64,000 nt of DNA from Octopus sinensis (lineage: Eukaryota): positions 7,750,001-7,814,000 of the forward strand of contig NC_043024.1 of the NCBI RefSeq assembly GCF_006345805.1, written 5' to 3'. Both the position numbers and the translations under genes were made by a program. Shown here one piece after another: positions 20,630 through 49,794 of the stretch (positions within the stretch are counted from its first letter, which is position 1; the number at the start of each line of letters is the position of its first letter). The notes under the pieces are model-generated. The model searched no databases, had not been told where the DNA came from, and was given only the letters and a program-made list of their open reading frames with translations.

Positions 20630-20853
20630 ATGGATGCCACATCGTCTGTGACCAAAGATGGTGAAGTATCAGAAGACGCAAAGACACCCGTTGCAGAAAA
20701 TAAACCAGAAACCTCTCTGTCAGATGAAATTTCCAAACAGAATAAGGACACAGAAGTAACAGAGTCTTCTCACACTAATGCTGTGGACACTAATAATTCC
20801 AGTACCAAAATAGGGGTCAGTGATCGTAAAGGAGAAGCAAAAATTAAGGCTCA
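20630..20853 (+). CDS. DUS3L: DUS3L coding exon 1 (low-complexity N-terminus ending GEAKIKAQ)
   Basis: Acceptor TTTTGTAG ends at 20621, ATG at 20630, donor CA|GTAAGT. The phase-2 junction continues into YLL in the next exon. Confidence 0.85.
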
Positions 20854-23800
20854 GTAAGTTATACTCCTCTGATTTTTTTAAATTTTTAACTTGTATTTTT
20901 GATGGAATTCTGCTTCAAGCACACCATATAACTTCTCAGAACTTTTTTTATTTTTAGGAATTTTCAGAAAAATTTTGTAAATTTGTGTTCTACACGTGGG
21001 AATTCATACGATTATCGTAAATCCTCAAGTATAGTCCGCCTTTGAGTATAATACGCAGAGGATTTTTAGGGGTCTGTACCTCTGAAAAACCTAAACCTTG
21101 TGTATAATACGCACCCCTTCTCTAACTTGAGTCGTGCGTAATTAAGCCAGCAGCACCTAGTCGAACAAACACTTCCGTGCATGAGTAATACAATAATGGT
21201 GATGTTCTTAACTGTTATATGGGAATGTAAATATGTTTGCAAATTGTTTTTGTTACATGTTATTCTGGGTTCTGAATACTTTTATTTTAATAAATGTTGC
21301 TTACTGCAAGTTATGGATGATTCTTTTATGACTTCATTGCTTTCAGGCTTAGCTTAAGGTATTTTCACGCCCGACATCACAAGATGCGTCTGAATAAACA
21401 TTGCCGGACAGCAAATAGAGACTCGGACATTGCTGAGAAAATAATTTTCATTTTTAACCTTGTATAATAATAACTTTCATTTTTAACCCCGTAACTTAGC
21501 GGTTCGGCAAAAAAGACCGATAGAATAAGCACTAGGCTTACAAAGAATAAGTCCTGGGGTCGATTTTCTCGACTAAAGGCTGTGCTCCAGCATGGCCACA
21601 GTCAAATGACTGAAACAAATAGAAGAGTAAACAACTTTTAAAAGTTATGTATACTAAATTCAGAATGTTTATGATACAGATGTATATGTAAAGAGAGTTT
21701 AGAGTTTTAATGAGTTTTGAGGAGCTGTGGTAATTTAATAAGTGATGATCAGATAATCAGAAATTTCAATTATCTGGCAGTGTGTCAGATAGGAAAGACT
21801 TTATTGTATACTAGCACTATGACCTGGCGTTGCTGGATCATAGTGCTAGTGCATGCATATACAGCTGTGTGCGTGCACACATACATGCGAGTACTGTCCA
21901 AATCGCCGACCAAACACATACAGCTAGCTGGCATTCAATTGGCATATCAAGTTTCGGGCATTTTGATTGGGTTTTGGATAGAAAATTCACTAAAAAGTCA
22001 CTTCCATCTATTTTTTAATGGCTTTGCGGGGTGACTGGGGAAATATAAAGATGTGCACGACCACCCTTGTGCGGTTTTGAATGAACATAGAAAGTGCGAG
22101 CCCTCTAACTGAAAAATTGTGGATTTGTATAAAGGACACACACACAGACATTTTGCCGTTTATATATATAGAATTAAAAGGCGGCGAGCTGGCAGAAACG
22201 TTAGCGCACCGGGCGAAATGCTTAGCGGTATTTCGTCTGTCGTTAGGTTCTGAGTTCAAATTCTGCCAAGGTCGACTTTGCCTTTCATCCTCTCAGGGTC
22301 GATAAATAAAGTACCAGTTACGCACTGGGATCGATGTAATCGACTTAATCCCTTTGTCTGTCCTTGTTTGTCCCCTCTATGTTTAGCCCCTTGTGGGTAG
22401 TAAAGAAATATATATATAGAGAGATAATTATGTATATAATCTAGCTTTGTTTCCTTTCTTCCACCAGATATCTGCTACTAGACTACAAACCGAAAATAGA
22501 TACTGAATTTGTTGCAAAAGAGACTCAAAATGCCTTAAAACATCTCAATGAAGAGAACTCAGAAAATTCAAGCTTGGAACCTCCTCCCAAAAAGTTACGA
22601 TTAAAAGGACGGAACAAAAAAAGACCCTTTGAGAAAAAGCTACAGGCTTGCGAGAAATTATGCGGCAGCATCATTCAGGAAAAAGAATGTGCATACGGCC
22701 CTAAATGCATATTTCTGCATGATGTGAAAGCCTTTTGGGAATCCAAACCCGAAGACATAGGCCCAGAGTGCCATCTGTTTACTAAATTTGGCAGATGTCC
22801 CTACAGTTTTTCTTGCAGGTTTGCACGGCACCACATATCTGAATCGTTGGAAAATATGGTAAATAAAGACATCTATGAAGGCGTGCCATTGTCCAGAAAT
22901 AGCGTGAACCACTTGGATAAGGATGTACAGAGACTTCTGTGGAAGAGGAAGTATGATTTCAGTAAATCTCAGAAGGTTTTGGAGGACTTAAACAAGAAAT
23001 CAAGCACAAACAATGTACTGGAAGATGGTCAAAAAGCTGATATGAAGAAATTGGATGCAGATTCTTCCAGCCAGAATATAGGTTTTGTATCTGATGAAGA
23101 TCTCATCAAATTAAGACCAGCTGAAAAGAAAAAAGTAAGGAGATTTTTTTTTCTGTTTTTTTTTTTCCTCTTGTTATTTGTTTATTTTTATTTTTTTAGA
23201 AGTTTGCTTCCCGACTATATGGTTTTGGGTTAGTTCCACTTTGCAAACATGAGTTCTACTCACATGCCAAATAAAGTGATATTGTCTGCAAAAATTAGAA
23301 ACTGGACACAAAAAAATCAATTTTCAAAGTAATTGAACATAAACAATGAAACGGATTATTTCCCTTGGGTTTTTAAAAAGGAAAATATGAGGTGGATTAT
23401 AAAGATCCCTTCCAGGGGCCGTATTATCAATTTTTTCAAAAATCTAAGTATGTTACGAGGTTTCTAGACATGAATTCTACTCACGTGTCAAGTTTCATCA
23501 AAATCAATAAACCGATGTGGGAGGAGTTAGATAACAACGCCACAAACAAACACACACCGATTTTTCACATATGTAGTAGATATTATCATCATTAACTTCC
23601 CCTTTTCCCATGCTGGCATAAGTAGGACAGTTTGACAAGAATAGACAAGCCAGAGGGTTCCACCAGGTTGGCATGGTTTCTTCAGCTGGATGACTTCCTA
23701 ACTCCAACCACTTATCAGAATGTACTGGATGCTTTTTACATGGCACCAACACCAGTGAGGTCACCAAGTACTTGCAAGAGAAAACCCCCCCAACTGAGCA

Positions 23801-26800
23801 GGGTATAGACTGGTGGAATAAGAAACTATGATAGAAGAGCAAGGAGAAAAAAACTATGATGGAGAGAGAGGAGCTGATGTCTTGGTGAAGAGATGAATTC
23901 TTGGTTTGTCAACCGGGAAAGTGAGAGAGAGAGAAAGAAAGAGATGTGAGGTCCAGGTACAATGTCCAATATGAAGCTGAATATTATATCGCCATTGTTC
24001 TTTAATGTCCGTTTTTTTCCATGCTGGCATGGGTTGGAGAGTTTGACCAGAGCTAGTAAGCTGGAGAGCTGCACCAAGTTCTAGTCTGATTTGGCGTGGT
24101 TTCTATGGCTGGATGCCCTTCCTAATGCCAACCACTTTACAGTGTGTGCTGAGTGCTTATAATATGCCACCAGCACACAACTCTTGCAGGTTAATCCTCT
24201 CCACCAGGAGGGATGGCCTTAACACTTTTGCTGTGGAGGATGGGTTTTCTTGAGTACAGCAAGACACCAGGTAGCTCAGTCTTCTGTCATCTTTTAGTTC
24301 GTTATAATCATGACAACTAAGGCCAGGTTAGAGCACTGGCCAGAACTCCAGAACTGGTCAACAGTCTTTCTCATCCTTCTGGAATTATACTGCCTGACTG
24401 GCCCTCGTGCCGGTGGCATGTAAAAGCACCCACTGTACTCTCGGAGTTGTTGGCATTAGGAAGGGCATCCAGCTGTAGAAACTCTGCCAAATCAAGATTA
24501 AAGCCTGGTGCAGCCTTCTGGTTCGCCAGACCTCAGTCAAATCGTCCAACCCATGCTAGCATGGAAAGCAGACATTAAACGATGATGATGATGAATATTC
24601 TTAATTAGATTCAATTAACTATATCTATATATATAAAACTGTAGTTGTGTGAGTGTCTGTCCCCTTCGATTTAGATTCCTAACTACTCCCACATTTTGCG
24701 GTGCAGTTTAACCAAATTCGGGTATCTTATAGTCGTGATTCATATCGAGCCCGTCTGAGTATTAGCGCGCGTCTACGATGAGTCTACGATTTTAAAAATA
24801 ATTTAACATTTTTTATTCCATTTTAATGCATAATTTTTCGTGTGTCGATGATGGCGGAGTTGGCGTCCATGGTCACACCTGCACCTGTTTGCTTCTCCCC
24901 CTTCTTCCCTCCCTCGTGAAGCTGTGGGGAAGGGAGTGTAAGGAAATCAACGTCGTAAAGCGTTGTCAAGGAGACCAGCGTTCTTTTAGAACAACGACTT
25001 CATGGCTTGAAGTCGCCAAAACAGAAATGGCTAAGAAAGCCCGAATTGGCATCTATAAGGGAAGTAACTCTCTAAAAATGCTTATATAGTTATTTCCCTT
25101 ACAAACCCGAGCAACGCCGGGCGATACTGCTAGTTCAATATATTATATTCTTCCCCTACAAAAACACAATTTGTCCCCTTGCATCTAAAGTGGGTTTTGT
25201 ATGGTGGTTAATGTTTATTTTGTTTGTTTGTTTTCTTAGTATTTCTTTTTTAAATTTAATTTTTTTCTTTCTCTTTTTATTTTTACAGATTGACTTTTCA
25301 AACAAACTATTTCTTGCACCTCTCACTACAGTAAGTGCTGTCATCTGTTGGCGGTTTATTTTGGATTTTTTTCTTTTTTATATATCTCATAAATTTCTCT
25401 ATCAAGGCATAGGAGTGGCTGTGTGGTAAGTAGCTTGCTTACCAACCACATGGTTCCGCTTTCAGTCCCACTGTGTGGCACCTTGGCCAAGTGTCTTCTA
25501 CTATAGCCTCAGGTCGACCGAAGCCTTGTGGGTGGATTTGGTAGACGGAAACTGAAAGAAGCCCGTCGTATATATGTGTGTATATATATATATGTATGTG
25601 TGTTTGTCCCCACCACCATCGCTTGACAACCAATGCTGGTGTGTTTATGTCCCCATAACTTAGCGGTTTGGCAAAGGAGACCGATAGAATAAGTACTAGG
25701 CTTACAAGGAATAAGTCCTGGGGTCGATTTGGTCGACTAAAGGCAGTGCTCCAGCATGGCCACAGTCAAATGACTGAAACAAGTAAAAGAGTACCTATCT
25801 AGTTTCATGGACCCCAGTGGTCAACTGGTACTTATTTCATTGACCCACCAAAGGGATGAAAGCTAAATTCGACATCAGGAGAATTTGAACTCTGAATGTA
25901 AGGACAGAAGAAATTCTTATTTCTTTACTGCCCACAAGGGGCTAAACATAGAGGGGACAAACAAGGACAGACAAAAGGATTAAGTCGATTATATCGACCC
26001 CAGTACGTAACTGGTACTTATTTAATTGACCCAAAAAGGATGAAACGCAAAGTCAACCTTGGCAGAATTTGAACTTAGAATGTAGCAGCAGACGAAATAC
26101 CTCTTTCTTTAATACCCACAAGGGGCTAAACAAAGAGAGGACAAACGGATTAAGTCGATTACATCGACCCCAGTGCGTATCTGGTACTTATTTAATCGAC
26201 CCCGAAAGGATGAAAGGCAAAGTCAATCTCGGCAGAATTTGAACTCAAAACGTAGCGGCAGACAAAATACCTATTTCTTTACTCCCTGAAAGGATGAAAG
26301 GCTAAGTCGACCTCAGCGGAATTTGAACTCAGGACGTAGCAACAGATGAAATACCGCTAAGCATTTCGCTTGGGGTGCTAACATTTCTGCCAGCTTGCCG
26401 CCTTTAGACAGAAGAAATTTTGCTAAGCATTTCAACCAGCATTTCTGCCACCTTCCTACCTTAAAACACAAGTAAATATGGTGATTAATTTATTCCTTCT
26501 TTCACTTCTTATCCTAGGTTGGTAATTTACCGTTCCGTCGGTTATGCAAGAGTTACGGTGCAGACATCACTTGCAGTGAAATGGCCGTGGCCACAAGTCT
26601 ACTCCAAGGTAAAACGGAATGGGCTCTTCTCAAGCGACACGAATCTGAAGATATTTTTGGAATCCAGGTAAATATTGCAGGAATCTTTTGCTACAGTTTC
26701 TCAAATAACATTTCTGTAATAAGGTTTGGGCACAGGTGTGGCTGTGTGGTTTGGCAATCTTGCTTCATAGCCTTGTGGTTTCGGGTTCAATCAGCAAATG

Positions 26801-27934
26801 TCTTCTAGTATAGCCCCAGGTTATAGTAGAAGGCCTTTTGAATGGATTTAGTAGACAGAAACTGGGAGAAGCCCTTTGTGTGTTTATCATCATTTAACAT
26901 CCGTTTTCCATGCTGGCATGGGTTGGACTATACACACACACATATGTGTGTGTGTGTATGTAGCCATTCCTTTGTAGTATAGGGGTAAGTGTGCATGCCA
27001 GTCATGTGGGAGACAGGAGTTCGATTCCCTGCCAAGGAGGTTTCAATTTCCACCCCTCAGTTGAGGGGTCTTGTTTTGCAGATTACATGTAAAAAAGCAC
27101 CTAGGACATTGTAAAGTGCTTGGCATTGGGAAGGGCATCCAACCATAGAACCATGCTAAAGCAGACAGTAGGGCTTGGTGCAGTCTTGTGACTTGCCAGT
27201 TCTGTGGAAGTATCCAACCCGTGCCAGCATGGTAAATGGAAAATAAAGGGTGATGAAAATGATGATTATATATATATAGCACAGGGGATAGTGCACTGGA
27301 CTTCTAATCTAGAGGTTGTGGGTTTTTAGACGCAGGAGTGGCTGTGTGGTAAGTAGCTTGTTTACCAACCACATGGTTTCAGGTTCAGTCCCACTGTGTG
27401 GAACCTTGGGCAAGTGTCTTCTCCTATAGCCTCGGGCTGGCCTTGACTGGCTTCCGTGCCAGTGACACTTAAAAAGCACCAACCGATCGTAGCCATTGCC
27501 AGCCTCGCCTGGCACGTAAAGAGCACCCACTACACTCACGGAGTGGTTGGCGTTAGGAAGGGCATCCAACCCTAGAAATATTGCCAGATCAGACTGGAGC
27601 CTGGTGCAGCCTTCTGGCTTCCCAGATCCCCGGTCGAACCGTCCAACCCATGCTAGCATGGAGAACGGACGTTAAACGATGATGATGATGATGATGATGA
27701 TCTTACAAGCAAATCCAATGACTGAAACAATTAAAAGACTTTGTGTGCCTTACTGTCTTCTCTCTCTGCCAGTTGTGTGGTGCCCATGTCGATTCCATGA
27801 CTCGCTGTGCCCAACTCATTCAAGAGAACTGTAAATTTGACTTTGTGGACATCAACTGTGGTTGTCCTATTGAGCTGATATACCAGAAGGTAAGTGAAAC
27901 CATTCGTCAATCCAAGGATTTGGTTTTGCCTTTA

Positions 27935-27965
<31 letters not shown>

Positions 27966-28100
27966 ATGTCAGTCTGTCTAGTATCCATATCATCCGATCT
28001 AGCTTTGTCTCTCTTTTCTTCTCTCTTTCTCTCTCCATATCTGTGTATATCTCTGTGTATTTATCTGTGTCTGTACATCTGTCCAGCTCTCTCTCTCTCT

Positions 28101-28146
<46 letters not shown>

Positions 28147-28762
28147 ATATATATATATATACATACATAGGCGCAGGAGTGGCTGTGTGGTAAGTAGCTT
28201 GCTAACAGACTACATGGTTCCGGGTTCAGTCCCACTGCGTGGCATCTTGGGCAAGTGTCTTCTGCTATAGCCCCGGGCCAACCAATGCCTTGTGAGTGGA
28301 TTTGGTAGACGGAAACTGAAAGAAGCCTGTCGTGTATATGTGTTTGTCCCCCTAGCATTGCTTGACAACCGATGCTGGTGTGTTTACGTCCCCGTCACTT
28401 AGCGGTTCGGCAAAAGAGACCGATAGAATAAGTACTGGGCTTACAAAGAATAAGTCCCAGGGTCGATTTCCTCGACTATAGGCGGTGCTCCAGCATGGCC
28501 ACAGTCAAATGACTGAAACAAGTAAAAAAAAAAACATTTACACACAGTTGAAACACTCCTGTCACAACTTGGGACCTTGAAGACTGCTTTAATGCAAGAA
28601 AGTATACTAGTCCCTTAATATTTGATATTCAATCTTTCATCTATTCAATAGATCAATACTTTTTTTCATTTTACACTATATATACTATTTATACTATATA
28701 TTCTACATTAATATTATAAAGAATATAAAACATAAAAAACAGACAGAGACGGAATTCCTTTG

Positions 28763-28822
<60 letters not shown>

Positions 28823-31800
28823 GGGTATCTGAGAGACACCACCATGCTGAAATAGCAGTCAAATCTCTGACTCTAAAAACCACCTTAGTTCAGAAACTGT
28901 TCCCTTATTTGGCGAGACTTCGTGGTTTTTAGAGTGAGGGTTTGACTGCTATTTCGGCATGGTGGTATCTCTCAGATACCCTTATTTATAGTTGTAAAAA
29001 ATTATTACCTTTGTATGGTATTTATTCCCATGCTGGCTACTTGATAATATCGATATTATCCTTATTTATAAATTTATATATATATATATATATATATAAA
29101 GGAAATTCTGCTAAGCATTGTCTGATGTACTCAACTGCTCTCAAAATTTAAGTAGAAAAACAGGAAAAATTATCCAGAATCCTTGTCCGGTACCGAATCA
29201 ATCCCAAAATTTAATCACTTTGTGTCAGTCACAAGTCTAAATATCCCTGAAAGTTTCATCCAAATCCATCCAGCGGTTCTTGAGATATTTTGTCCATGGA
29301 CAAACAAGGAAACAAACACAACTGAAAAAAAAAATACCGCTGCCTTCACTAAGCTGGAGGTGACTAGTCACATCATCAATATCTCAAAGCTACAAGGTAA
29401 GCCATGATTAATTGAAAGCAATGTGAATAGATAAGCATTACATGAATGGCGGCGAGCTGGCAGAAACGTTAGCGCGCTGGGCAAAATGCATAGCCGTATT
29501 TCGTCTGCCGTTACGTTCTGAGTTCAAATTCCGCCGAGGTAGACTTTGCCTTTCATCCTTTCGGGGTCGATAAATTAAGTACCAGTTACGCACTGGGGTC
29601 GATGTAATCGACTTAGTACCTATGTCTGTCCTTGTTTGTCCCCTCTATGTTTAGCCCCTTGTGAGTAATAAAGAAATAGGTATTTCGTCTGTCGTTACGT
29701 TCTGAGTTCAAATTCCACCGAGGTCGACTTTGCCTTTCATCCTTTCGGGGTCGATTAAATAAGTACCAGTTACGCACTGGGGTCGATGAAATCGACTTAA
29801 TCCGTTTGTCTGTCCTTGTTTGTCCCCTCTATGTTTAGCCCCCTGTGGGTAGTAAAGAAATAGATAAGCATTACATTTGACAAAGTAATCTAAATGCTAA
29901 AGAGTTAATTCAGAGATTATCTGAACATGGAGCCTTTTGTAAACATGTCTTACTGTCTTCTTGTTTTTATTCCCCTCCAGGGAGAAGGTTGCGCCCTGAT
30001 GGGAAGACCAAGCCGTCTTGAACAGATTGTAAAAGGAATGAAGTCTGTTTTAGAAGTACCACTGACAGTAAAAATGAGGACAGGTATTCAAGATGGCAAG
30101 AATATTGCCCATACTCTCATCCCTAAGTTAACTAAAGTTGGGGTTGATCTCATCACTGTAAGTATCACTTTGCATTTTCTCACCATTCTACATATTATTC
30201 CATCCGCTTTGGTTGTTTCATCATCATCGTTTAACGTCCGCTTTCCATGCTAGCATGGGTTGGACGATTTGACTGAGGACTGGCGAACCAGATGGCTGCA
30301 CCAGGCTCCAATCTTGATCGGGCAGAGTTTCTACAGCTGGATGCTCTTCCTAACGCCAACCACTCAGAGAGTGCAGTGGGTGGTTTTACGTGCCACCAAG
30401 GCCAATCAGGTGGTATTTGCAATCCTGTCACACTACCCAACTCGTGCCAGCATCGAAAGGAGGCAAGCTGGCGGAAACAGCACACCAGGCGAAATGCTTA
30501 GCGGTATTTCTATATTTCTTATTTCTTTATTGCCCACAAGGGGCTAAACACAGAGGGGACAAACAAGGACAGACAAAGGGATTAAGTCGATTATATCAAC
30601 CCCAGTGCGTAACTGGTACTTATTTAATCGACTCCGAAAAGATGAAAGGCAAAGTTGACCTCAGTGGAATTTGAATTCAGAATGTAGCGGCAGACGAAAT
30701 ACCTCTAAGTGTTTCGTCCGACGTGCTAACGTTTCTTATTTCTTTACTGCCTACAAGGGGCTATACACAGAGGGGACAAATGGATTAAGTCAACTATAAC
30801 GACCCCAGTGCGTAACTGGTACTTATTTAATTGACCCCCGAAAGGATAAAAGGCAAAGTCAACCTCGGCGGAATTTGAACTCAGAATGTAGCGGCAGATG
30901 AAATACTGCTAAGCATTTTGCCCGGCGTGCTAACGTTTCTACCAGCTCACCACCTTATTTTTATATTTCTCTCATCATCTCACTCACTCTCCCCCTAACT
31001 GTCTCTCTTTATCTACCTACCTGTCTCTCTCACACTTCTCTCTTCTCTCAGATACATGGCAGGTCAAGAGAACAACGTTATACTAAACTAGCTGACTGGG
31101 ACTACATTAACCAGTGTTCACAAATTTCAGAAACTGTTCCCTTATTTGGTGAGCCTTTATTTTTTATTTATTTTTTTTTTTCTTTTCTTGCTGTTCCCTT
31201 TTTTTTTTTGTGATTCAGAAGTTTGCTTCCCAACCCCTCCGTTTCCATTTCGGTCCCATTGTGTGGTACCTTCTGCAACTGTCTCTTTTATAGCCCTTAA
31301 GTTGATTAAAGACTTTTTGAGTGGATTTGGTAGACAGAAGCTAAAAGAAAATTATTGTGGGTTGTGTGTGTGTATATGTGTATATACACATAGACACACC
31401 CTGGGTCTGGCAACATCAATAGTGCAGGAGTCATGAAAAACGTACCTGGTCCACACTGTAAAGTGTGACTTTGGGAAGGGCATCAAGCCATAGAAACCAT
31501 GTCAAAGCAGACATTGAAGCATGACGTAATTCTTGGAGACATTTGATCCTGTCAAACTGTCCAACCCATACCAGCATGGAACATCTACATTAAATGATGA
31601 TGATGATGTATCTTAAAGACTGACAGTACTGCCAAGACTATTCTTTGCTGTGTGATCTAATGATACCATAATATAATCTAGCGTTGTCTCTGTATTTACC
31701 AACCATCATACTTATTCTACACAAGTTGTCTCCCTTAGCTTTATCTTCAACTCAGACCTGATTATAAATTAAGTAGAACTTCTCTCAATATTAAATATGT

Positions 31801-34800
31801 GTGCTCTAACTTTAATCATCATCATCGTTTAACGTCTGTTTTCCATGCTAGCATGGGTTGGATGGTTCGACCGGGGTCTGGGAAGCCAGGAGGCTGCGCC
31901 AGGCTCCAGTCTGATCAGTCACAGCATAAAACTTGCCCCTGATTTTTTTTATATTCCATGGGACCAGAAACATAAATTTGGGTCTTTCACCTTTTAGTCA
32001 TTAGACTGCAGCCATGCAGAATTTTAATTGAATGAATGGACCCCAGGACCTTTTTTTTTTTAAAGCCCAGAACTTATTCTATCAATTTTTTTTCCCCTAA
32101 ATCTATAAGTTACAGGAACGTAAACACATTAACACTGGTTGACAATCAAGACAAAGACACATACACACACACACATAATATATTGATATATAGAAAATAG
32201 ATTCCATCAACTGCCAAGGGGTAAGCTAGAGGGAATAGACAACTTCCATTATCTAGGTGACCGAGTTAGTAGAGGAGGTGGATGCTCTGAGGGTATAGCT
32301 GTGAGAATAAGAATAGGCTGAGCAAAGTTCAGAGAGGTCCTACCTCTCCTAGCAACAAAGGGCCTCTCCCTCAGAGTGAAATGCAGATTGTATGATGCTT
32401 GTGTGTTAACAGTTATGCTGCACGGCAGTGAAACATGGGCTGTGACAGCTGAGATGTGTAGGCTTGAAAGAAATGAAACCAGTATGTTTTGCTGAATGTG
32501 CAATGTTAGTGTGCATGTATGACAGAGTGTAAGCATCTTGAGAGAAAAATTAGGATTAAGAGGCATCAGATGTGATTTGCAAGAGAGATGACTGTACTGA
32601 TATGGTCATGTGACCATCATCATCATCATCGTTTAGCGTCCGCTTTCCATGCTAGCATGGGTTGGACGGTTCAACTGGGGTTTGGGAAGCCAGAAGGCTG
32701 CACCAGGCCCAGTCTGATCTGGCAATGTTTCTACAGCTGGATGCTCTTCCTAATGCCAACCACTCCGTGAGTGTAGTGGGTGCTTTTTACATGCCACTGG
32801 CACAGGTGCCAGACGAGGCTGGCAAACGGCCACGATTGGATGGTGCTTTTTACATGCCACCGGTACGAGGCCAGTCGGGGTGGTGCTGGCAATGGCCACG
32901 TTCGGATGGTTCTCTTATGTACCACTGGCACTGGTATCACAGCTGCAATTTCCATTGATGTTGATCGATTTCGATTTTTGTGATGCGTATGGATGAGGAC
33001 AGCTGTGTAAAGAAGTGCTGATCTTTAACAGTAGAGGGAACCTGCTGTAGAGCTAGATCCAGGAAGACATGGAACGAGGTAGTGAAGCATGATCTTTGAA
33101 CTTTGAGCCTCACAGAGGCAATGACTAGTGACCGAGACCTTTGGCGATATGCTGTGCCTGAGAAGACCTGTCAAGCCAAGTGAAATCATAGTCATGACAC
33201 CCATGCCAGTGGCACGTAAAAAGCGCCTTTCAAGCGTTAGGCCTCATGGGGGCAATGACAAATGGCCAAGACCTTTGGCAATATGCTCTGTAATTGAGAA
33301 GGTCTCAGAAAATGATAAAGCAGCCATATTAAACTCATGTCCGTTAGATTTCAAAATGACTTTTTTATATTTGCTTCTGTTTTTTTTAATCAGGTAATGG
33401 GGATGTTCTTTCATTCGAAGATGCCAATTCCTTTTTAAGTAACACATACGCTAAAGGGATTATGATTGCAAGGTAAGATACCATTCTTATTGTTTGTTTT
33501 CAGCTTTCTTGAAGAATACAGTTCTGTATTTAAGAGATGAGGAATCATTTACATTATTTACATTTGACGGATATTTGTCCTCATCTTGTTTGTTGTTAAC
33601 ACAACGTTTTGGCTGATATACCCTCCAGCCTTCATCAGATGCCTGGGGGAAATTTCGAACCTGGGTTCTCATTCCTAAGGTATTTTTCGTTATTATTATT
33701 ATTATTGTTGTTGTTGATTCCGAGTTCGATTCCAAGCAATGACCTGAACAATAACAATAATAACAATAATAATAATAGTAACATTGAAAAATACCTTAGG
33801 AATGAGACCCAGGTTTGAAATTTCCCCAAGACACCTAAAAAGTTCATACCGATTCATAGTAGCTTACATTTTGATTTATTTTAGAACATGGTTGAGTCCA
33901 TAAAATAGGATTTGATTACACCTCCATTTAGAGCACAGTTTAAGCTATCTTTTCGTGGAAGAAGGTTTATGTTCCTATAACCTATGTTAATTCTGTAACC
34001 CTTTAAAATGGAAGATAAGAAAGTTCATTTTCCACACTTGATGCTTTGGGAACCAGACAAAAATTGCTGCAGCTCGGTTGGAATGTGTTACCCCTACCCT
34101 CCATATTCACCAGCTATTGCTCCTTCGGATTTCCACTTATTCAGGTCTCTGCAGAATAATCTTAATGGTAAAAATTTCAATTCCTTGGATGACGTAAAAA
34201 GATACCTTGATGAATTCTTTGCCATGAAACCACCTCAGTCCTGGGAAGATGGAGACGCAAAATGATTCATATTTGGTTGATTAAAAATGTAATGGCAACT
34301 ATTTATTGACCTTTTTCTTTCCTTTAAAAATCGGCACAAACTTTCCGGACAACCCAATATATATATACACATATATATAAGTAGCAGGGTTGAATTGTTG
34401 AACTAAAACCTTTCAAGGTGTTGCTCCAGCATGGCTGAAGTGCAGTTATTGAAACAAGTAAAGGCTAAAAAGATAAAGATTTCTTGTGGAATAATTCGAG
34501 AGACGAAAATGTTAATTTTTTTTATTTTTTTACTATTTATTCAGATATATTATCACTTGTATTGTTTTGTTTTTGTCTTCAGGGGAGCACTTATCAAACC
34601 CTGGATCTTCACAGAGATTAAAGAAGAACGCCACTGGGACATATCTTCCAGTGAACGCTTAGACCTGCTCCGTCAGTTTGTTAGGAATGGTTTTGAACAC
34701 TGGGGAAGCGACCATCAAGGTGTTGAGACCACCAGAAGATTCCTTTTAGAAATGTTGTCTTTCTCTCATCGGTTAGTCATCGTTTCTCTCTTATTATCAC

Positions 34801-35906
34801 ATCCATCACACTGTAGCTTCTGTATATAGCCACTACACGTTCTTTATTTTCTCTCCTTATTTCTTTCTCTGTTCCTTTCTGTGGAAGAGTGCTAGGCTCG
34901 AAACGTTAAAGACTTTTTCACTTCCTGAGCGTTATACTAATACATCTGTTTGTTGTCTACACCACCTGTTTTCGTCTTTTGTGAATTCTTCCTATATATA
35001 AAACTAGCACTATGACCCGGCAACGCTGGGTCATAGTGCTAGTGCATGCATATACAGCTGCGTGCGTGCGAGTACTGTCCAAATCTCTGACCAATCACAT
35101 ACAGCTAGCTGGCATTCAATTGGCGTATCAGGTTTCGGGCATTTTGATTGGGTTTTGGATAGAAAATTCACAAAAAAGTCACTTCTATTGATTTTTTAAT
35201 GGCTTTGCGGGTTGACTGGGGAAATGTAAAGATGTGCACGACCACCCTTGGACGGTTTTGAATGACCATAGAAAGTGTGAGCCCTCTAACTGAAAAATTG
35301 TGGATTTGTATAAAGGACACACACAGAGACATTTATTACATACATAATATGTATATAATTCAAAAACACCCAGCAGATTCAGTCAATGAAATTTTAAAAT
35401 TTATTCCTTCTGTGCAGCCATCTAACCCATGCAAGCATGGAAAAGTAGATGTTAAAATGATGATAATAAGTGTTTCTTCTTCAGCAAAATAGTCAATGCA
35501 TATGTTAATTAATTATTTATTTTATATTGTAATTATTTCACAGATATATACCAGTCGGTGTTCTTGAGCGAGTTCCTCAGAAAATCAATGAGCGTCCACC
35601 ATATTACGTGGGGCGAGATGACCTTGAAACCCTCATGTCCAGTTCAAATTGTAGAGACTGGATAAAAATTAGGTAAAGACTTTTCAATTGCTTGTGTGTA
35701 TATGTATGATTGTATGCATATATATATATATATATATTTTTTTTTTCCCCTCTGTCTTCCCTTCTCTGGATCTTTCCTTTTCCTATGTTTCTGACGAAGA
35801 GCTCCGCTTGAATCATAAAACCCTCCTTCTTCCCTTCCTTCCTGAGCGTCCAATAATACTATACTTGTTCCACATCCTTGCGTTGTGTTTTCATATTTGG
35901 ATTAAC

Positions 35907-36321: not shown

Positions 36322-36365
<44 letters not shown>

Positions 36366-36884
36366 AGTGGCTGTGTGGTAAGTAGCTTGTTTACCAACCA
36401 CATGGTTCCGGGTTCAGTCCCACTGCGTGGCACCTTGGGCAAGTGTCTTCTACTATAGCCTCAGGACGACCAAAGCCTTGTGAGTGAATTTGGTAGACAG
36501 AAACTGAAAGAAGCCCGTCGTATATATGTATATGTATGTGTGTGTGTTTGTGTTTGTCCCCCTAGCATTGTTTGACAACCGATGCTGGTGTGTTTATGTC
36601 CCCGTTACTTAGCGGTTCGGCAAAAGAGACCGATAGAATAAGTACTGGGCTTACAAAAGAATAAGTCCCGGGGTCGAGTTGCTCGATTAAAGGTGGTGCT
36701 CCAGCGTGGCCGCAGTCAAATGACTGAAACAAGTAAAAGAGTGTATATATATATATATCGAGACTTAGATATATTAATATTTCTATATTTATTTTTTTCT
36801 TTCAATTGCAGTGAGATGCTGTTGGGCCCAGTTACAGAGAATTTCCAGTTTTTACCAAAACACAAGGCCAATGCATACAAATAG
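20630..36884 (+). CDS. DUS3L: tRNA-dihydrouridine(47) synthase [NAD(P)+]-like, complete CDS (11 coding exons, 647 aa)
   Basis: Exons 20630-20853, 22468-23134, 25289-25330, 26518-26667, 27773-27889, 29981-30157, 31052-31148, 33394-33472, 34583-34771, 35544-35672 and 36812-36884 sum to 1944 nt with GT-AG and consistent phases. The protein has two CCCH zinc fingers, [21 protein letters not shown] (catalytic Cys), [13 protein letters not shown], and ends [10 protein letters not shown]. Confidence 0.97.
21013..21480 (+). mobile_element. Probable pogo/Tc1-like DNA transposon end
   Basis: TATCGTAAATCCTCAAGTATA...GTATAATACGCA resembles pogo-type termini, from memory. No transposase seen. Confidence 0.3.
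21810..22172 (+). mobile_element. Helitron-like element with a 5' hairpin (copy at about 35003-35340)
   Basis: CTAGCACTATGACC...G(G/A)TCATAGTGCTAG hairpin at the start of both copies. Confidence 0.5.
22177..22410 (+). mobile_element. tRNA-derived SINE family B (representative; others at about 6270, 13255, 17097, 18761, 25918, 29445, 30465, 40603, 44900 and 47590)
   Basis: Head GGCGAGCTGGCAGAAACG...GAGTTCAAATTCC; central GCCTTTCATCCTTTCGGGGTCGATAAATTAAGTACCAG (Meta-domain-like, from memory); tail GTAAAGAAATA. Confidence 0.85.
22468..23134 (+). CDS. DUS3L: DUS3L coding exon 2 (two CCCH zinc fingers)
   Basis: CCAG acceptor and AAA|GTAAGG donor; C...[11 protein letters not shown] and [22 protein letters not shown]. 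Confidence 0.96.
25289..25330 (+). CDS. DUS3L: DUS3L coding exon 3 ([14 protein letters not shown])
   Basis: TTTTACAG acceptor and GTAAGT donor; 14 codons. Confidence 0.95.
26518..26667 (+). CDS. DUS3L: DUS3L coding exon 4 (VGNLPFRR...[17 protein letters not shown])
   Basis: CCTAG acceptor and CAG|GTAAAT donor; 50 codons. Confidence 0.96.
26968..27039 (+). pseudogene. tRNA-Asp(GTC) pseudogene in a DUS3L intron
   Basis: 72 nt collinear with eukaryotic tRNA-Asp (TCCT..TAGTATAG.GGT.AGT...GTCA...GGGAGAC.GG.GTTCGATTCCC..C..GGAG) with a GTC anticodon. U33 is replaced by A and the acceptor, anticodon and T stems have mismatches. Confidence 0.8.
27773..27889 (+). CDS. DUS3L: DUS3L coding exon 5 ([17 protein letters not shown])
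   Basis: GCCAG acceptor and AAG|GTAAGT donor; catalytic Cys motif. Confidence 0.96.
29981..30157 (+). CDS. DUS3L: DUS3L coding exon 6 (GEGCALM...PLTVKMRTG...)
   Basis: CTCCAG acceptor and GTAAGT donor; 59 codons. Confidence 0.96.
31052..31148 (+). CDS. DUS3L: DUS3L coding exon 7 ([19 protein letters not shown]...PLF)
   Basis: CTCAG acceptor and G|GTGAG donor. Confidence 0.96.
32250..33200 (+). mobile_element. RTE LINE 3' fragment, interrupted by a SINE at about 32616-32980
   Basis: [35 protein letters not shown]..., continuing after the SINE. Confidence 0.75.
33394..33472 (+). CDS. DUS3L: DUS3L coding exon 8 ([10 protein letters not shown]...GIMIAR)
   Basis: ATCAG acceptor and AG|GTAAGA donor. 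Confidence 0.95.
33520..33836. mobile_element. Penelope-like terminal repeat with a short inverted copy
   Basis: Inverted arms at about 33646-33688 and 33786-33826 around (TTA)n/(AAT)n. The minus strand carries CTGATGAAGGCTG..CAGCC-AAAACGTT, a hammerhead with G12 mutated. Confidence 0.5.
33990..34359 (+). mobile_element. Mariner transposon, internally deleted
   Basis: The N-terminus MEDKKVHF is fused to [24 protein letters not shown]..., and a mariner-type terminal repeat ...GGACAACCCAATA ends at 34359. Confidence 0.8.
34583..34771 (+). CDS. DUS3L: DUS3L coding exon 9 ([27 protein letters not shown]...)
   Basis: TTCAG acceptor and CG|GTTAGT donor. Confidence 0.96.
35544..35672 (+). CDS. DUS3L: DUS3L coding exon 10 ([19 protein letters not shown]...)
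   Basis: CACAG acceptor and AG|GTAAAG donor. Confidence 0.96.
36812..36884 (+). CDS. DUS3L: DUS3L last coding exon (EMLLGPV...KHKANAYK*)
   Basis: TTGCAG acceptor and TAG stop; AATAAA motifs follow at about 36920-36950. Confidence 0.96.
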
Positions 36885-37765: not shown

Positions 37766-38635
37766 TTCACTTGCCTCAACAGGTCTTCACAAGTAGAGAT
37801 GTGATACATTAGGCCTTCTACTATAGCCCGGGACTGACCAATGCCTTGTGAATAAATTTTGTAAATGGGAAATAAAAGAAGCCTAGGTGCAGGAGTGGCT
37901 GTGTGGTAACTAGCTTGCTTACCAACCACATGGTTCCAGGTTCAGTCCCACTGCATGGCACCTTGGGCTAGTGTCTACTATAGACTCAGGCCAACCAAAG
38001 CCTTGTGAGTGGATTTGGTAGACGGAAACTGAAAGAAGCCTGTCGTATATATGTTTATGTTTTTGTGTCTGTTTGTCCCCACCACCGTCGCTTGACAATC
38101 GATGTTGGTGTGTTTATGTCCCAGTAACTTAGCAGTTCAGCAAAAGAGTCCAATAGACTAAGTACTAGGCTTACAAAGAATAAGTCCTGGGGTCGATTTG
38201 TTCAACTAAAGACAGTGCTCTAGCATGGCCACAGTCAAATGACCGAAACAAATAGAAGAATATATATATATGTAAGAAATTGAGATGACAAAAAGAATAA
38301 ACAATTCTGTTATGAACTCCATTGGCTTACAGTTGTTTCTGCTACAACATGCAATGCACTTTGAGTGCATAATTGTTTATTCTTTTGTCATCTCAATTTC
38401 TTAATGCTGCTCTGTACTCCACTGATGCTTCATTCTGAAGCATACTCTTTTACTTGTTTCAGTCATTTGACTGCCTTTCTGGAGCACCGCCTTTAATCAA
38501 GCAACTCAACCCCGGGACTTATTCTTTTGTAAGCCCAGTACTTATTCTATCGGTCTCTTTTGCCGAACCACTAAGTAACGGGGACATAAACACACCAGCA
38601 TTGGTTGTCAAGCAATGCTAGGGGGACAAACACAA

Positions 38636-38677
<42 letters not shown>

Positions 38678-39644
38678 GCGACAGTCTTCTTTCAGTTTCT
38701 GTCTACCAAATCCACTCACAAGGCTTTGGTCAGCCCGAGGCTATAGTAAAGGACACTTGCCCAAGGTGCCACGCAGTGGGACTGAACCCGGAAGCATGTG
38801 GTTGGTAAGCAAGCTACTTACCACACAGCCACTCCTGCGCCTATGTATATTCAGCCTTAACACCAGGTTATTAGTATTGCTATGGCTAAGCAAAATATTA
38901 AAATAAATATACAAGTGGCTGTGTGGTAAGTAGCTTGCTTACGAACCACATGGTTCCGGGTTCAGTCCCACTGCGTGGCACCTTGGGCAAGTGTCTTCTA
39001 CTATAGCCTCGGGCCGACCAAAGCCTTGTGAGTGGATTTGGTAGACGGAAACTGAAAGAAGCCTGTTGTATATATGTATATATCCCCCATAACCTTAGCA
39101 ATTTGATAAAAAGGAACCAATAAAATAAGAACCATCTTAAACCTTAGTAACGGGGTCAATTCAATGAAACAAAACCCTTCGAGGCAGTGTTCTGGCATGG
39201 CCGCTGTCCAATGATTAAAACAAGTAAAAGGAAAACGAGTAAAGTCTGAATAAGAGGTCATGAATGGAATGCCTCTGATCATAGGTATACTCGACCAGTA
39301 TTGACCTGGAGTTAAACAACAACAGTGACCCTAAGAAGAGATGCAAAATAGGATTCTTTTACTTGTTTCAGCCACTAGACTGTGGCCATACTGGGGCACC
39401 ACTAAATAAGGTTTACTCAATCAAATCAACCCCTAGTAGTTAAATTTGAAGGCGGGTGCATATTCTGGCTGTCTCTTTTTTTTTTTTTTAGTCAAACCAT
39501 GAAGTGACAGGGACATAAACAAACCAATACTAGTCATCAAGCAATGGGAGGGACGCATACACAAAGACACACGCACACACACATAATTTTTTTTTTTTCA
39601 GTGGTAAGAATGAAGTTTCTAAAATGGTTAGAGAAATTCAAAGA

Positions 39645-39716
39645 ATTGCTTTGGTCCAATGGTCGAACATCTGTCATGTTTAACAGAAGATGTGGGTTTG
39701 AATCCCACAGGCTGCC
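39645..39716 (+). pseudogene. Degenerate tRNA-derived sequence
   Basis: A-box-like TGGTCCAATGG and B-box/T-arm GTGGG-TTTGAAT-CCCAC at tRNA spacing; isotype cannot be assigned. Confidence 0.3.
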
Positions 39717-42307: not shown

Positions 42308-43119
42308 AAATTACATTTGGTTTGTATGCCATTAGCTACCATTTCTGTTCTCTTGTTGCTATCAATAATGTTGCTCGTGTTAATAATATTGTCTCTGTTA
42401 ATAATATTGCTTATGCTAATAATGTTCTTTGTTTTAATGATGTTTTTTTAATAATGTTGTTTGTGTTAATGATATTGTTTACTAGCAGTATAGCCCGGCG
42501 TTGCTCGGGTTTCTTTTCTTTTCGACCCTTTAGAATTGGAATTTTTGAAAAGTAAATATTTTGCATTATGTAGCTTGTTATTCTCTTTAAGTGAACATTT
42601 TTCTGGTTGAAATACACCGAAAAATGGCGACACAGCAATCAAAAAATCATAAAATATAGAGATTTTCATAGAAAAAAAGCACCTTTTTGATGTAAATAAT
42701 TTTTGGTGTTAACATGGTCCGATTTGAATTTTATCTTCTACGGAAGGAAGAGCAAGCCTTCTTCTATCATACTCTCAATTTTGGTCAACTGCACTGCAGG
42801 GTCTCGGAGGATATGGTGTTAGTTGAAGGCTACCAAACCTGCCACCGCCTGGCATTGCTCGGGTTTGTTTCGACCCTTTAGAATTGGAATTTTTGAAAAG
42901 TAAAAATTTTGCATTATGTAGCTCGTTATTCTCTTTAAGTGAACATTTTTCTGGTTGAAATACACTGAAAAGTGATGACACAGTAGTCAAAAAATCGTAA
43001 AAAATAGGGGCCAGTCAGGCAGGCCTGGCATCTGTCACATTCAGATAGCGCCTTTTACGTGCCACTAGCATGGGAGCCAGTCAGGGGTATTATTAACAGG
43101 GCTGGACATGCATGGTTGC

Positions 43120-43850
43120 AATCTCACTTTAGTTGCTGGGTCTTCTCAATGACAGCATATCTCCAAAGGTCCCGGTCTCCTGTCATTGCCCCTGTGAGGC
43201 CCAATGTTCGAAGGTCATGCTTCACCTCACCCCACGTCTTCCTGAGTCTACCTCTTCCTTCTACAGTTAGGGAGCAGCACTTCCTTACACAGCTATCTTC
43301 ATTCATACATAACACATAACCATACCAGCATACTGACAACCAGATAAGGGATCGGGGGACCCTGTCAAAGGATTTTTCCATGTCAACAAAAGCCAGGTAC
43401 AGAGGTTTATCTTTGGCTAGGTATTTCTCCTGCAGTTGTCCTATTAGAAATATAACATAAGTGGTGCTTTTCCCTGCCACAGACCCAAACTGCATCTCAT
43501 CTAAACTGACCCTCTCCCTAATTAGTTGGGCTATGACCCTCTCTGTGAATTTCATTACCTGATCCAACAACTTGATACCTCTGTAATTATTCCTATCTAA
43601 TGCATCACCTTTACCTTTGTAGCAGTTGACTATGGTGCTGCTACAACAGTCATTGGGTATGACTCCATGTATCACCTGATTGACTATACAAGTGACTAGA
43701 CTATAGGATGTAGTCAATTTGACTAGAATGTCCACCAGACCGGTACATGAATAGGTGACTGGCAGGTTTCCTGAAGTTAGTATTACAAACCATAAGATCA
43801 TTTGCATTGCAGAACTCCAGCAGCCAGGCAGTGATATCATAATAATTAAC
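43120..43850 (-). mobile_element. RTE LINE reverse-transcriptase fragment (internally deleted)
   Basis: YKGKGDALDRNNYRGIKLLDQVMK...MQFG...QLQEKYLAKDKPLYLAFVDMEKSFDRVPR. Confidence 0.85.
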
Positions 43851-44138
43851 ACAGATACATGAAGGAAAATCATAAAACCTAGATTGAAAGAAACTTTGAA
43901 AATTGCTCATGGTGTTTCAGGAAAAAAACTGCATTTTAAGGGTGAAATAATAAGTGACGTTACATTTTGTGGAAAAACCTTAAAAATCAAAGTTTTTGTG
44001 CTCGGTAATATGACAAATTTATTTGGAACAGACTGGATGGAAGTATTTAACTTATAGGACCTCCCCATAAATTTGTTTCTAAAAGAAGCCATCAGAGGAA
44101 TTAAAAAACGAATTAAGATTTTTCCTGAAGTTTTTCTC

Positions 44139-49345: not shown

Positions 49346-49386
<41 letters not shown>

Positions 49387-49687: not shown

Positions 49688-49752
<65 letters not shown>

Positions 49753-49794
49753 CTAGCAGTATATATATATATATATATATAATATATATATATA

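What the first reader, a model, noticed from the sequence alone, without database searches (positions are those of the whole stretch)
28815..28989. Intronic hairpin whose loop is a copy of a downstream exon end and splice donor of the same gene
Seen: arms 28815-28883 and 28922-28989 are near-perfect reverse complements (~69 bp, a few mismatches) around a 38-nt loop. Loop bases 28889-28912 (TTCAGAAACTGTTCCCTTATTTGG) are identical to 31126-31149, the last 23 nt of DUS3L coding exon 7 plus the donor G. The match extends to 30/32, with the GT donor changed to GC. Neither the arms nor the loop recur elsewhere that I could see. A 24-nt exact match 2.2 kb away is very unlikely by chance. Inference: an inverted-repeat element (MITE-like, or Penelope-like given its GAAATAGCAGTC motif) captured host sequence during insertion or repair. 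It now sits sense-oriented in DUS3L pre-mRNA as a dsRNA stem that displays a host exon/5' splice-site decoy, and could be an ADAR or Dicer substrate or a cryptic GC donor.
Basis: partly seen in the sequence, partly recalled or inferred. Interest (0 to 1): 0.7.

Follow-up and report, generated by a model that had tools for sequence, protein, structure and literature searches.

The report
Repair-scar hairpin in octopus DUS3L intron
A real, young 175-base hairpin in an intron of the octopus DUS3L gene carries in its loop a copy of the same gene's exon 7 end and splice donor; it looks like a neutral scar of error-prone DNA repair, not a mobile element or a working RNA signal.

Summary
The window is Octopus sinensis chromosome DNA, and DUS3L lies on the + strand. 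An exon model reproduces the RefSeq protein exactly. The hairpin (28815-28989) sits in intron 5. Its 38-nt spacer holds a 24-nt exact copy (30/32) of the last 23 nt of coding exon 7 plus the first 9 nt of intron 7, 2.2 kb downstream.

An independent O. vulgaris assembly has the same hairpin at the orthologous site. There the loop keeps GGTGAG, so the GC "donor" is a later O. sinensis change, and the template was unspliced (genomic DNA or pre-mRNA). All nine arm differences are singletons, so the arms were a perfect palindrome when the two species split. None is compensatory. Hairpin divergence equals flanking intron divergence (94.3% identity each).

O. bimaculoides lacks the whole 1.4-kb block. 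The palindrome extends outward through (TA)n tracts into a neighbouring repeat. I found no direct target-site duplication, no second copy in the sequence available, and no Rfam hit (no hammerhead, no miRNA).

Best reading: a fold-back inverted duplication with templated filler, made by template-switching repair at a fragile (TA)n site. It probably forms dsRNA in the pre-mRNA, but nothing shows selection. The genome-wide copy number of the arms could not be tested here.

The parts
27773..27889 (+). DUS3L coding exon 5. Intron 5, which holds the hairpin, starts at 27890.
   Evidence: The exon model translates exactly to P0001 / XP_029652735.1. Pfam Dus domain hit.
27922..29320 (.). A block of about 1.4 kb in intron 5 that is absent from the O. 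bimaculoides orthologous intron. It contains unique DNA, a high-copy SINE-like repeat (28140-28546), the low-copy repeat R2 (28618-28812), the hairpin and more unique DNA. The right boundary is approximate.
   Evidence: Alignment A4 and blastn against L001. Copy-number profile.
28752..28814 (+). Outer left part of the larger palindrome: the end of repeat R2 (GAATTCCTTTGAATAA) plus a (TA)n tract.
   Evidence: Inverted repeats I2 and I3 pair it with 29057-29108. The R2 copy in O. bimaculoides (L001 28345-28552) runs across this boundary and is followed by unrelated sequence.
28815..28883 (+). Left arm of the hairpin (69 nt).
28884..28888 (+). CTTAG, 5 nt of the spacer with no identified template. 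Together with the copy it reads like an AG acceptor in front of a 23-nt pseudo-exon.
   Evidence: Read directly from the sequence. The same 5 nt are present in O. vulgaris.
28889..28920 (+). Templated copy of the exon 7 / intron 7 junction: 24 nt exact, 30/32 overall. The ancestral state was 28 nt exact and kept the GT donor.
28921..28921 (+). Single unassigned spacer base (C in O. sinensis, A in O. vulgaris).
28922..28989 (+). Right arm of the hairpin (68 nt).
28968..28987 (+). Outer 20 nt of the right arm. TCTCTCAGATAC equals the exon 7 acceptor plus its first 4 nt (31044-31055). CCCTTATTT equals the exon 7 end (31139-31147). These may be further templated patches; the left arm carries the mirror image.
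   Evidence: 0 of 409 control windows share an exact match of 12 nt or more with the arm. This was noticed post hoc, so it is suggestive only.
28990..29056 (+). Unique segment present only on the right side of the larger palindrome. It is bounded by a 13-nt direct repeat, TACCCTTATTTAT (28977-28989) and TATCCTTATTTAT (29057-29069). This is a later indel in one arm.
   Evidence: Direct repeat D3. Read directly from the sequence. Conserved in O. vulgaris.
29057..29108 (+). Outer right part of the larger palindrome: TATCCTTATTTATAAATT, then (TA)n, then AAAGGAAATTC.
   Evidence: Inverted repeats I2 and I3.
29981..30157 (+). DUS3L coding exon 6.
31052..31148 (+). DUS3L coding exon 7 ([33 protein letters not shown]).
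31126..31157 (+). Source of the loop copy: the last 23 nt of exon 7 plus the first 9 nt of intron 7.

Best explanation
The hairpin is a non-coding structural mutation, a scar of error-prone break or replication repair. It arose in the common ancestor of O. sinensis and O. vulgaris inside a (TA)n-rich, insertion-prone stretch of DUS3L intron 5.

Inferred mechanism: a broken or stalled 3' end underwent serial template switching of the SD-MMEJ / polymerase-theta / MMBIR type.
1. It copied about 32 nt in cis from the exon 7 / intron 7 boundary 2.2 kb downstream. The template was unspliced, so genomic DNA or nascent pre-mRNA.
2. It then snapped back on its own strand and copied the adjacent sequence in reverse. 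This produced an inverted duplication with the foreign 32 nt trapped as an asymmetric centre.
3. Short patches identical to both ends of exon 7 at the outer end of the arms suggest further switches to the same template.

Shown: the structure, the identity and direction of the copy, the unspliced template, presence in two species, a perfect ancestral palindrome, and neutral decay since.

Inferred: the repair pathway and the order of steps.

Consequence (inferred): every DUS3L pre-mRNA should fold a dsRNA stem of about 69 bp, so it is a likely incidental ADAR target. Nothing indicates that the stem or the displayed splice-site copy is under selection.
For: - Exact 24-nt copy, 30/32 overall, in the same orientation 2.2 kb away. 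Shuffles give 0 matches.
- The O. vulgaris loop reads TTCAG...TTTGGTGAGACTT. The ancestral copy was therefore 28 nt exact and ran at least 6-9 nt into intron 7, so the template was unspliced.
- The exon end is ancient: it is conserved in Argonauta and in DUS3L proteins generally, whereas the hairpin is absent there. The direction is exon to loop.
- All 9 arm differences across four arms (two species) are singletons, so the arms were a perfect 69-nt palindrome at the species split.
- None of the changes is compensatory. Interspecies identity is 94.3% for the hairpin and 94.3% for the flanking intron.
- The palindrome continues outward through (TA)n into the terminal 16 nt of another repeat, R2. 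It has no termini of its own.
- A possible 7-nt microhomology lies where the copy meets the right arm: GGTTTTT in O. vulgaris intron 7, against GTGGTTTTT at the arm start. The blastn match runs 42 nt at 88%.
- The outer arm ends carry a 12-nt and a 9-nt identity to the two boundaries of exon 7.
- The site is unstable. O. vulgaris has a further 389-nt insertion in the same (TA)n tract. O. bimaculoides lacks the whole 1.4-kb block. Another palindrome, with perfect 88-nt arms, is centred on a (TA)n tract at 49616-49869.
- The known mechanisms fit: snap-back and in-trans templated extension by Pol theta (PMC4912351), SD-MMEJ (PMC2943611, PMC5728401), and fold-back inverted duplications with spacers (PMC3907307).
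Against: - The 47-nt core of the arms has no identifiable source in the window or in the related loci. I cannot show which arm is the original, nor that the arms are single-copy in the genome.
- No pre-event allele was recovered. O. bimaculoides lacks the entire block and its assembly has gaps in this intron.
- Templated fillers copied from 2 kb away are less typical of Pol-theta repair than fillers copied from within about 100 bp.
- The junction microhomologies are short and partly ambiguous. CTTAG and one further base remain unexplained.
- The exon-boundary patches in the arms were noticed post hoc.
Confidence: 0.6

Rival explanations
1. The hairpin is a palindromic MITE or foldback-type DNA transposon, for example one mobilised by Tc1/mariner that inserted at a TA in the (TA)n tract. 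Its centre later broke and was repaired with filler copied from exon 7.
For: - Nearly the whole length is palindromic, and the element lies next to or inside (TA)n, the preferred Tc1/mariner target. A reading AGGG...CCCT flanked by TA on both sides is possible.
- The window holds other hairpins whose arms occur only once in it (33647-33827 and 59820-60360), so hairpin-shaped elements are frequent in this genome.
- The origin of the 47-nt arm core is unknown, which would fit an element that came from elsewhere.
Against: - There is no second copy of the arms in the 64-kb window, the 33-kb O. bimaculoides locus or the 31-kb Argonauta locus. Exact-match scans of metagenome and viral collections also found none, though those collections are barely relevant.
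- The only candidate target-site duplication is TA, which is its own reverse complement and so says nothing. The longer flanks are inverted, not direct.
- The inverted symmetry continues into a different repeat (R2) and into both (TA)n tracts.
- Even under this model the loop must have been captured in situ by repair, because its source is 2.2 kb away in cis.
Confidence: 0.22
2. The hairpin is a selected RNA element of the DUS3L pre-mRNA. It could be a long dsRNA that recruits ADAR, like mammalian editing inducer elements. It could also display a decoy exon 7 5' splice site, or a 23-nt frameshifting poison micro-exon (AG|TTCAG...TTTG|GT), in its loop.
For: - The predicted stem is very stable in both species: -113.8 kcal/mol (z -17) and -119.9 kcal/mol (z -21).
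- Coleoids edit RNA heavily, and editing tracks dsRNA abundance across Metazoa (PMC5625713). Intronic hairpins can boost editing at distant sites (PMC3479170, PMC5654063).
- The O. vulgaris loop keeps a 5' splice site as good as the real one: TTG|GTGAGA against TTG|GTGAGT.
- Five of seven transitions in the arms leave G.U pairs. This is not significant.
Against: - The hairpin diverges at exactly the flanking intron rate.
- There are no compensatory substitutions. Mismatches, a bulge and a transversion have accumulated.
- O. sinensis has lost the GT of the decoy donor.
- The whole block is absent from O. bimaculoides.
- A 23-nt exon whose polypyrimidine tract and acceptor are buried in a 69-bp stem is unlikely to be recognised (inference).
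Confidence: 0.08
3. The structure is an assembly artefact, or the match is chance, or the exon end derives from the element.
For: Palindromes and (TA)n tracts are hard to assemble, and the O. bimaculoides assembly is gapped in this intron.
Against: - Two independent assemblies of two species carry the hairpin at the orthologous site, with species-specific substitutions.
- The chance expectation for a 24-nt identity in this window is essentially zero.
- The exon end is conserved coding sequence that predates the hairpin.
Confidence: 0.01

Closest known systems
Templated ('filler') insertions of alternative end joining: SD-MMEJ, and Pol-theta snap-back or in-trans templated extension (PMC2943611, PMC5728401, PMC4912351)
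   Same: A short tract at a repair junction is an exact copy of nearby sequence on the same chromosome. It is combined with a reverse-complement copy of adjacent sequence (snap-back), and short microhomologies lie at the switches.
   Different: The template is 2.2 kb away rather than tens of bases. The snap-back copy is unusually long, at least 69 nt and probably about 130 nt. The event is a fixed germline variant shared by two octopus species, not an experimental break.
Fold-back inverted duplications and center-break revision of palindromes (PMC3907307; center-break mechanism from my own knowledge of Cunningham et al. 2003)
   Same: Two inverted arms are separated by a short asymmetric spacer. 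An asymmetric centre is what stabilises a palindrome. The structure formed at a secondary-structure-prone AT-rich site.
   Different: The scale is about 0.2-0.35 kb rather than kb to Mb. The spacer is foreign templated sequence rather than the original single-copy segment between fold-back microhomologies.
MITEs / foldback transposons
   Same: A small non-coding element with long inverted arms in an AT-rich context.
   Different: No family, no defined termini and no informative target-site duplication could be shown. The symmetry runs into neighbouring repeats.
Intronic long hairpins acting as editing inducer elements (PMC3479170, PMC5654063)
   Same: A long, stable intronic stem about 1 kb from the nearest exons, in an animal with very active ADAR.
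   Different: There is no conservation beyond the neutral rate and no editing data. Known inducer elements are evolutionarily conserved.

Membership tests
MITE / foldback DNA transposon | Multiple dispersed copies that share the terminal inverted repeats | tested here: inconclusive
   There are 0 further copies in the 64-kb window and in the O. bimaculoides and Argonauta loci. Metagenome and viral scans found 0. A protein-level proxy search of the arm ORF found no candidates and had no positive control. The whole octopus genome cannot be searched with these tools, so a family of fewer than about 100,000 copies could be missed.
MITE / foldback DNA transposon | Direct target-site duplication flanking defined termini | tested here: not met
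   The flanks are inverted, not direct (ATAAATAA|GGG...CCC|TTATTTAT). Only the self-complementary TA could be read as a duplication. The symmetry continues into (TA)n and the end of R2.
MITE / foldback DNA transposon | A precise empty site in a related genome | tested here: inconclusive
   O. bimaculoides lacks the whole 1.4-kb block and its assembly is gapped in this intron. The Argonauta intron cannot be aligned.
Penelope-like element / hammerhead ribozyme repeat | Hammerhead ribozyme core (match to the Rfam hammerhead models) | tested here: not met
   No hammerhead hit at gathering score over the window, nor at E<=10 over 28500-29300. The GAAATAGCAGTC motif is not accompanied by a CUGANGA box.
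Penelope-like element / hammerhead ribozyme repeat | Adjacent RT / GIY-YIG coding sequence or its remnant | tested here: not met
   Only ORFs of 20-69 aa overlap the region, and these are (TA)n or arm read-throughs. The nearest RT fragment is 14 kb away, at 43124-43873.
Templated insertion / fold-back inverted duplication (repair scar) | The inserted tract is identical to a nearby template | tested here: met
   24 nt exact, 30/32 overall. The ancestral copy was 28 nt exact (31/32 to the present O. sinensis source).
Templated insertion / fold-back inverted duplication (repair scar) | Inverted duplication of adjacent sequence around a short asymmetric centre, with arms identical at birth | tested here: met
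   The consensus of the four arms is a perfect 69-nt palindrome, and all 9 differences are singletons. The spacer is 38 nt.
Templated insertion / fold-back inverted duplication (repair scar) | Microhomology at the template switches | tested here: inconclusive
   GGTTTTT (7 nt) is shared by O. vulgaris intron 7 just after the copied tract and by the start of the right arm. CCCTTATTT is shared by the exon 7 end and the arm termini. The left junction (CTTAG) is unexplained.
Templated insertion / fold-back inverted duplication (repair scar) | A derived state, with the pre-event allele present in an outgroup | tested here: inconclusive
   The hairpin is absent from O. bimaculoides and Argonauta, but no allele with a single arm or an intact (TA)n tract was recovered.
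miRNA / hairpin-RNA (endo-siRNA) precursor | Match to a known family, or small-RNA reads from the stem | tested here: not met
   There is no Rfam miRNA match beyond (TA)n noise far below threshold. Small-RNA reads cannot be tested here. A survey of 32 molluscs found no endo-siRNA pathway (PMC12479628).
ADAR substrate / editing inducer element | Long near-perfect dsRNA within a transcribed region | tested here: met
   A stem of about 69 bp in sense pre-mRNA: dG -113.8 kcal/mol (O. sinensis) and -119.9 kcal/mol (O. vulgaris).
ADAR substrate / editing inducer element | Observed A-to-I editing, and an effect on editing of neighbouring exons | not testable with these tools
   No RNA-seq data are accessible.
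ADAR substrate / editing inducer element | Conservation of the stem beyond the neutral rate | tested here: not met
   94.3% identity against 94.3% for the flanks, and no compensatory changes.

The most novel reading that the evidence does not exclude
The hairpin is more than a scar. It would be an RNA-level regulator of DUS3L in the O. vulgaris / O. sinensis lineage: a 69-bp intronic dsRNA that recruits ADAR to the pre-mRNA while its loop shows a copy of the exon 7 5' splice site (a U1 decoy, or a 23-nt poison micro-exon). A second unexcluded novelty concerns its origin: the filler may have been reverse-transcribed from the gene's own nascent pre-mRNA during break repair. That would fit the sense orientation and the unspliced junction.
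Probability: 0.08. Interest if true: 0.65.

Novelty: new member of a known kind. Interest (0 to 1): 0.3.

Why it matters
It is a clean natural example of a germline palindrome born with templated filler, and the comparison of two sibling octopus species dates it. The palindrome was perfect at the split and has decayed neutrally since. This shows that (TA)n tracts in octopus introns are sites of repeated break-and-repair that create long hairpins de novo. Such hairpins add to the dsRNA load of a genome whose transcripts are heavily edited by ADAR. If they arise often by repair rather than by transposition, that bears on where cephalopod dsRNA substrates come from. For DUS3L itself I see no sign of consequence.

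Tried and rejected
- Rfam at gathering score over the whole window, and at E<=10 over 28500-29300. Only noise from the (TA)n tract; no hammerhead, miRNA or snoRNA.
- Exact-pattern scans for the arm core in metagenome contigs (twice) and viral contigs. Nothing found. These collections are not expected to hold octopus DNA, so the result carries little weight.
- A proxy for a genome-wide search: the 69-aa ORF that reads through the right arm was searched against the 5.8-billion-protein collection. It found no candidate, not even the locus itself, so the test had no power.
- O. bimaculoides as an outgroup. Its assembly has N-gaps in intron 5 and over the 3' end of exon 7, and exon 6 was not found. 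Neither the pre-event allele nor the ancestral source sequence could be read.
- I considered sampling more octopus loci through TE proteins. It would add roughly 200 kb of a 2.7-Gb genome, which detects only families above about 10,000 copies, so I judged it not worth a further large search.
- I asked whether loops of the three other hairpins that are not simply inverted pairs of the abundant repeat (33647-33827, 59820-60360, 49616-49869) also copy nearby sequence. They do not, although the third loop is mostly (TA)n, which BLAST's low-complexity filter hides.
- A blastn run without low-complexity masking on the (TA)n-rich flank produced only microsatellite hits. The useful part of that output was the O. 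bimaculoides copy of R2.
- ARAGORN finds no tRNA genes, although Rfam reports two weak tRNA-like hits.
Full report
**What is there**

There are two arms, 28815-28883 and 28922-28989, that are reverse complements. The core is 49 nt at 96%, and the full arms show 5 differences in 69. Between them lies a 38-nt spacer.

Bases 28889-28912 are identical to 31126-31149. These are the only two matches in the window even with three mismatches allowed, and shuffles gave none. The similarity runs to 30/32. Neither the arms nor the loop recur elsewhere in the 64 kb.

**Where it is**

A spliced model of the + strand gene found a 100% identical protein, tRNA-dihydrouridine(47) synthase-like (DUS3L) of Octopus sinensis. 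The window is identical to GCA_006345805.1 chromosome CM016886.1.

A unique GT/AG exon model reproduces XP_029652735.1 exactly. The exons are:
- 20630-20853
- 22468-23134
- 25289-25330
- 26518-26667
- 27773-27889
- 29981-30157
- 31052-31148
- 33394-33472
- 34583-34771
- 35544-35672
- 36812-36884

The hairpin therefore lies in intron 5, 925 nt after exon 5 and 991 nt before exon 6. The source is the last 23 nt of coding exon 7 plus the start of intron 7. The copy is in the sense orientation. As RNA the 175 nt fold to -113.8 kcal/mol (z = -17).

**It is real, and older than one species**

The O. vulgaris protein sits in the same 90% cluster. Its locus, from the independent assembly GCA_951406725.2, carries the hairpin at the orthologous place at 93.75% identity. 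Its fold is -119.9 kcal/mol. This rules out an assembly artefact.

The O. vulgaris loop reads ...TTATTTGGTGAGACTT, so the donor GT is intact there. The GC of O. sinensis is a later T-to-C change. The ancestral copy was 28 nt exact and extended at least 6-9 nt into intron 7. The template was therefore unspliced: genomic DNA or pre-mRNA, not mRNA.

The exon end encodes conserved DUS3L residues and is present, in diverged form, in Argonauta hians, which has no hairpin. So copying went from exon to loop.

**Age and selection**

I aligned the four arms: left arm and reverse-complemented right arm from each of the two species. There are nine differences and every one is a singleton. The consensus is a perfect 69-nt palindrome. 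The arms were therefore identical when the species split, and all present mismatches arose afterwards.

None of the changes is compensatory. Five of seven transitions happen to leave G.U pairs, which is not significant. The rest are C.A mismatches, one transversion and a 1-nt bulge.

Interspecies identity is 94.3% over the hairpin and 94.3% over 460 nt of flanking intron. I see no purifying selection on stem or loop.

**Surroundings**

The O. bimaculoides intron passes directly from the equivalent of about 27921 to about 29320. It lacks a 1.4-kb block, although that assembly is gapped nearby and exon 6 was not found in it. The block holds:
- unique DNA
- one copy of a very abundant SINE-like repeat (28140-28546)
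- a low-copy repeat I call R2 (28618-28812), which ends in a (TA)n tract and has another copy in O. bimaculoides followed by unrelated sequence
- the hairpin
- more unique DNA

GAATTCCTTT...(TA)n...AAATAAATAAGGGTA (28752-28827) pairs with TATCCTTATTTATAAATT(TA)nAAAGGAAATTC (29057-29108). An 80-nt extra segment on the right is bounded by a 13-nt direct repeat. So the palindrome reaches into the end of another repeat and has no termini of its own. I found no direct target-site duplication apart from the self-complementary TA.

The site is unstable. O. vulgaris has a further 389-nt insertion within the left (TA)n tract. A palindrome with perfect 88-nt arms is centred on another (TA)n tract at 49616-49869.

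**Junction details**

In O. vulgaris, intron 7 continues ...GGTGAGTCTCGGTTTTTTTT after the copied tract. The hairpin continues ...GGTGAGACTTAGTGGTTTTTAGAG. The two share GGTTTTT exactly where the copy gives way to the right arm, and the blastn match runs 42 nt at 88%.

The outer 20 nt of the right arm read TCTCTCAGATAC followed by CCTTATTT; with the shared C this gives the 9-nt CCCTTATTT. The first is the exon 7 acceptor plus its first four bases (31044-31055). The second is the exon 7 end (31139-31147). None of 409 control windows shares an exact match of 12 nt or more with the arm. ATAC at the exon start is the O. sinensis / O. vulgaris state; O. bimaculoides has GTGC. I noticed this after the fact, so I rate it as suggestive. 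It fits repeated switching to one template.

**Interpretation**

The best fit is a fold-back inverted duplication with templated filler, produced by template-switching repair at a fragile (TA)n site. These are known processes: SD-MMEJ (PMC2943611, PMC5728401), Pol-theta snap-back and in-trans templated extension (PMC4912351), and fold-back inverted duplications with spacers (PMC3907307). An asymmetric centre is also what makes a palindrome stable (my own knowledge of the center-break literature).

The structure, the copy, its direction, its unspliced template, its age and its neutral decay are shown. The pathway and the order of events are inferred.

**Rivals**

- A MITE or foldback transposon cannot be excluded, because the whole genome cannot be searched here. 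It has no positive support: no second copy in about 125 kb of octopod sequence, no informative target-site duplication, and no own termini. Even then the loop would have to have been captured in place by repair.
- The Penelope / hammerhead idea fails.
- A selected RNA role (ADAR recruitment in the manner of editing inducer elements, PMC3479170 and PMC5654063; or a decoy donor or poison micro-exon) is physically plausible in an animal with heavy editing (PMC5625713). It is contradicted by neutral divergence, by loss of the GT in O. sinensis, and by absence from O. bimaculoides.
- Dicer processing is unlikely, because molluscs show no endo-siRNA pathway (PMC12479628).
- Three other hairpins in the window that are not simply inverted pairs of the abundant repeat have loops with no local source. 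There is therefore no sign of a general capture system.

**Verdict**

This is a new instance of a known kind of structural mutation. It is tidy and datable but ordinary, and I score interest at 0.3. The decisive missing test is a genome-wide search with the arm consensus, together with a gap-free outgroup intron.

Noticed in passing
window, 44 intervals, e.g. 28140-28546, 36328-36738, 38448-38848, 62189-62787: A SINE-like repeat of about 400 nt occupies about 9 kb, 14% of the window, in 44 merged intervals. Most long inverted repeats in the window are simply pairs of it in opposite orientation. One weak Rfam tRNA hit (27270-27402) overlaps a copy (27327-27437), but ARAGORN calls no tRNA.
   Followed up: partly
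window 33647-33827 (DUS3L intron 8): A second hairpin with arms unique in the window and a similar build: arms of about 69 nt (80-89% complementary) with (ATT)n inside, and a 43-nt loop. It is present at the orthologous site in O. vulgaris (96.8%) and was not found in the O. bimaculoides locus. Its loop has no local source.
   Followed up: partly
window 49616-49869: A palindrome with perfect 88-nt arms, centred on a (TA)n tract. The outer parts of the arms recur at 42857-42908 and 50169-50220. It may be a fresh fold-back at a self-complementary microsatellite.
   Followed up: no
window 59820-60360: Another hairpin with arms unique in the window: arms of at least 116 nt (92%), probably about 160 nt, around a 217-nt loop.
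   Followed up: no
L004 19573-19961 (O. vulgaris), equivalent to inside the (TA)n tract at window ~28800: O. vulgaris has an extra 389-nt AT-rich segment inside the (TA)n tract just upstream of the hairpin. About 100 nt of it recur at window 49366-49457 and 53448-53552, both next to (TA)n tracts.
   Followed up: partly
L001 15179-15647 and 16854-17222 (O. bimaculoides GCA_001194135.2): N-gaps interrupt intron 5 and remove the 3' end of exon 7, and exon 6 was not found in the locus. This probably explains why the annotated O. bimaculoides DUS3L has 603 aa rather than 647.
   Followed up: partly
window 43124-43873 (-): A 249-aa ORF with a weak reverse-transcriptase (RVT_1) match, below the Pfam cutoff. 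It is probably a decayed retroelement fragment.
   Followed up: no
window up to ~14372 (-), e.g. 4461-4895: An ERCC3/XPB-type helicase gene lies head-to-head upstream of DUS3L. The same arrangement is seen in O. vulgaris, O. bimaculoides and Argonauta.
   Followed up: no
window 39648-39712 (+): A second weak Rfam tRNA-like hit (32.8 bits) that ARAGORN does not confirm.
   Followed up: no
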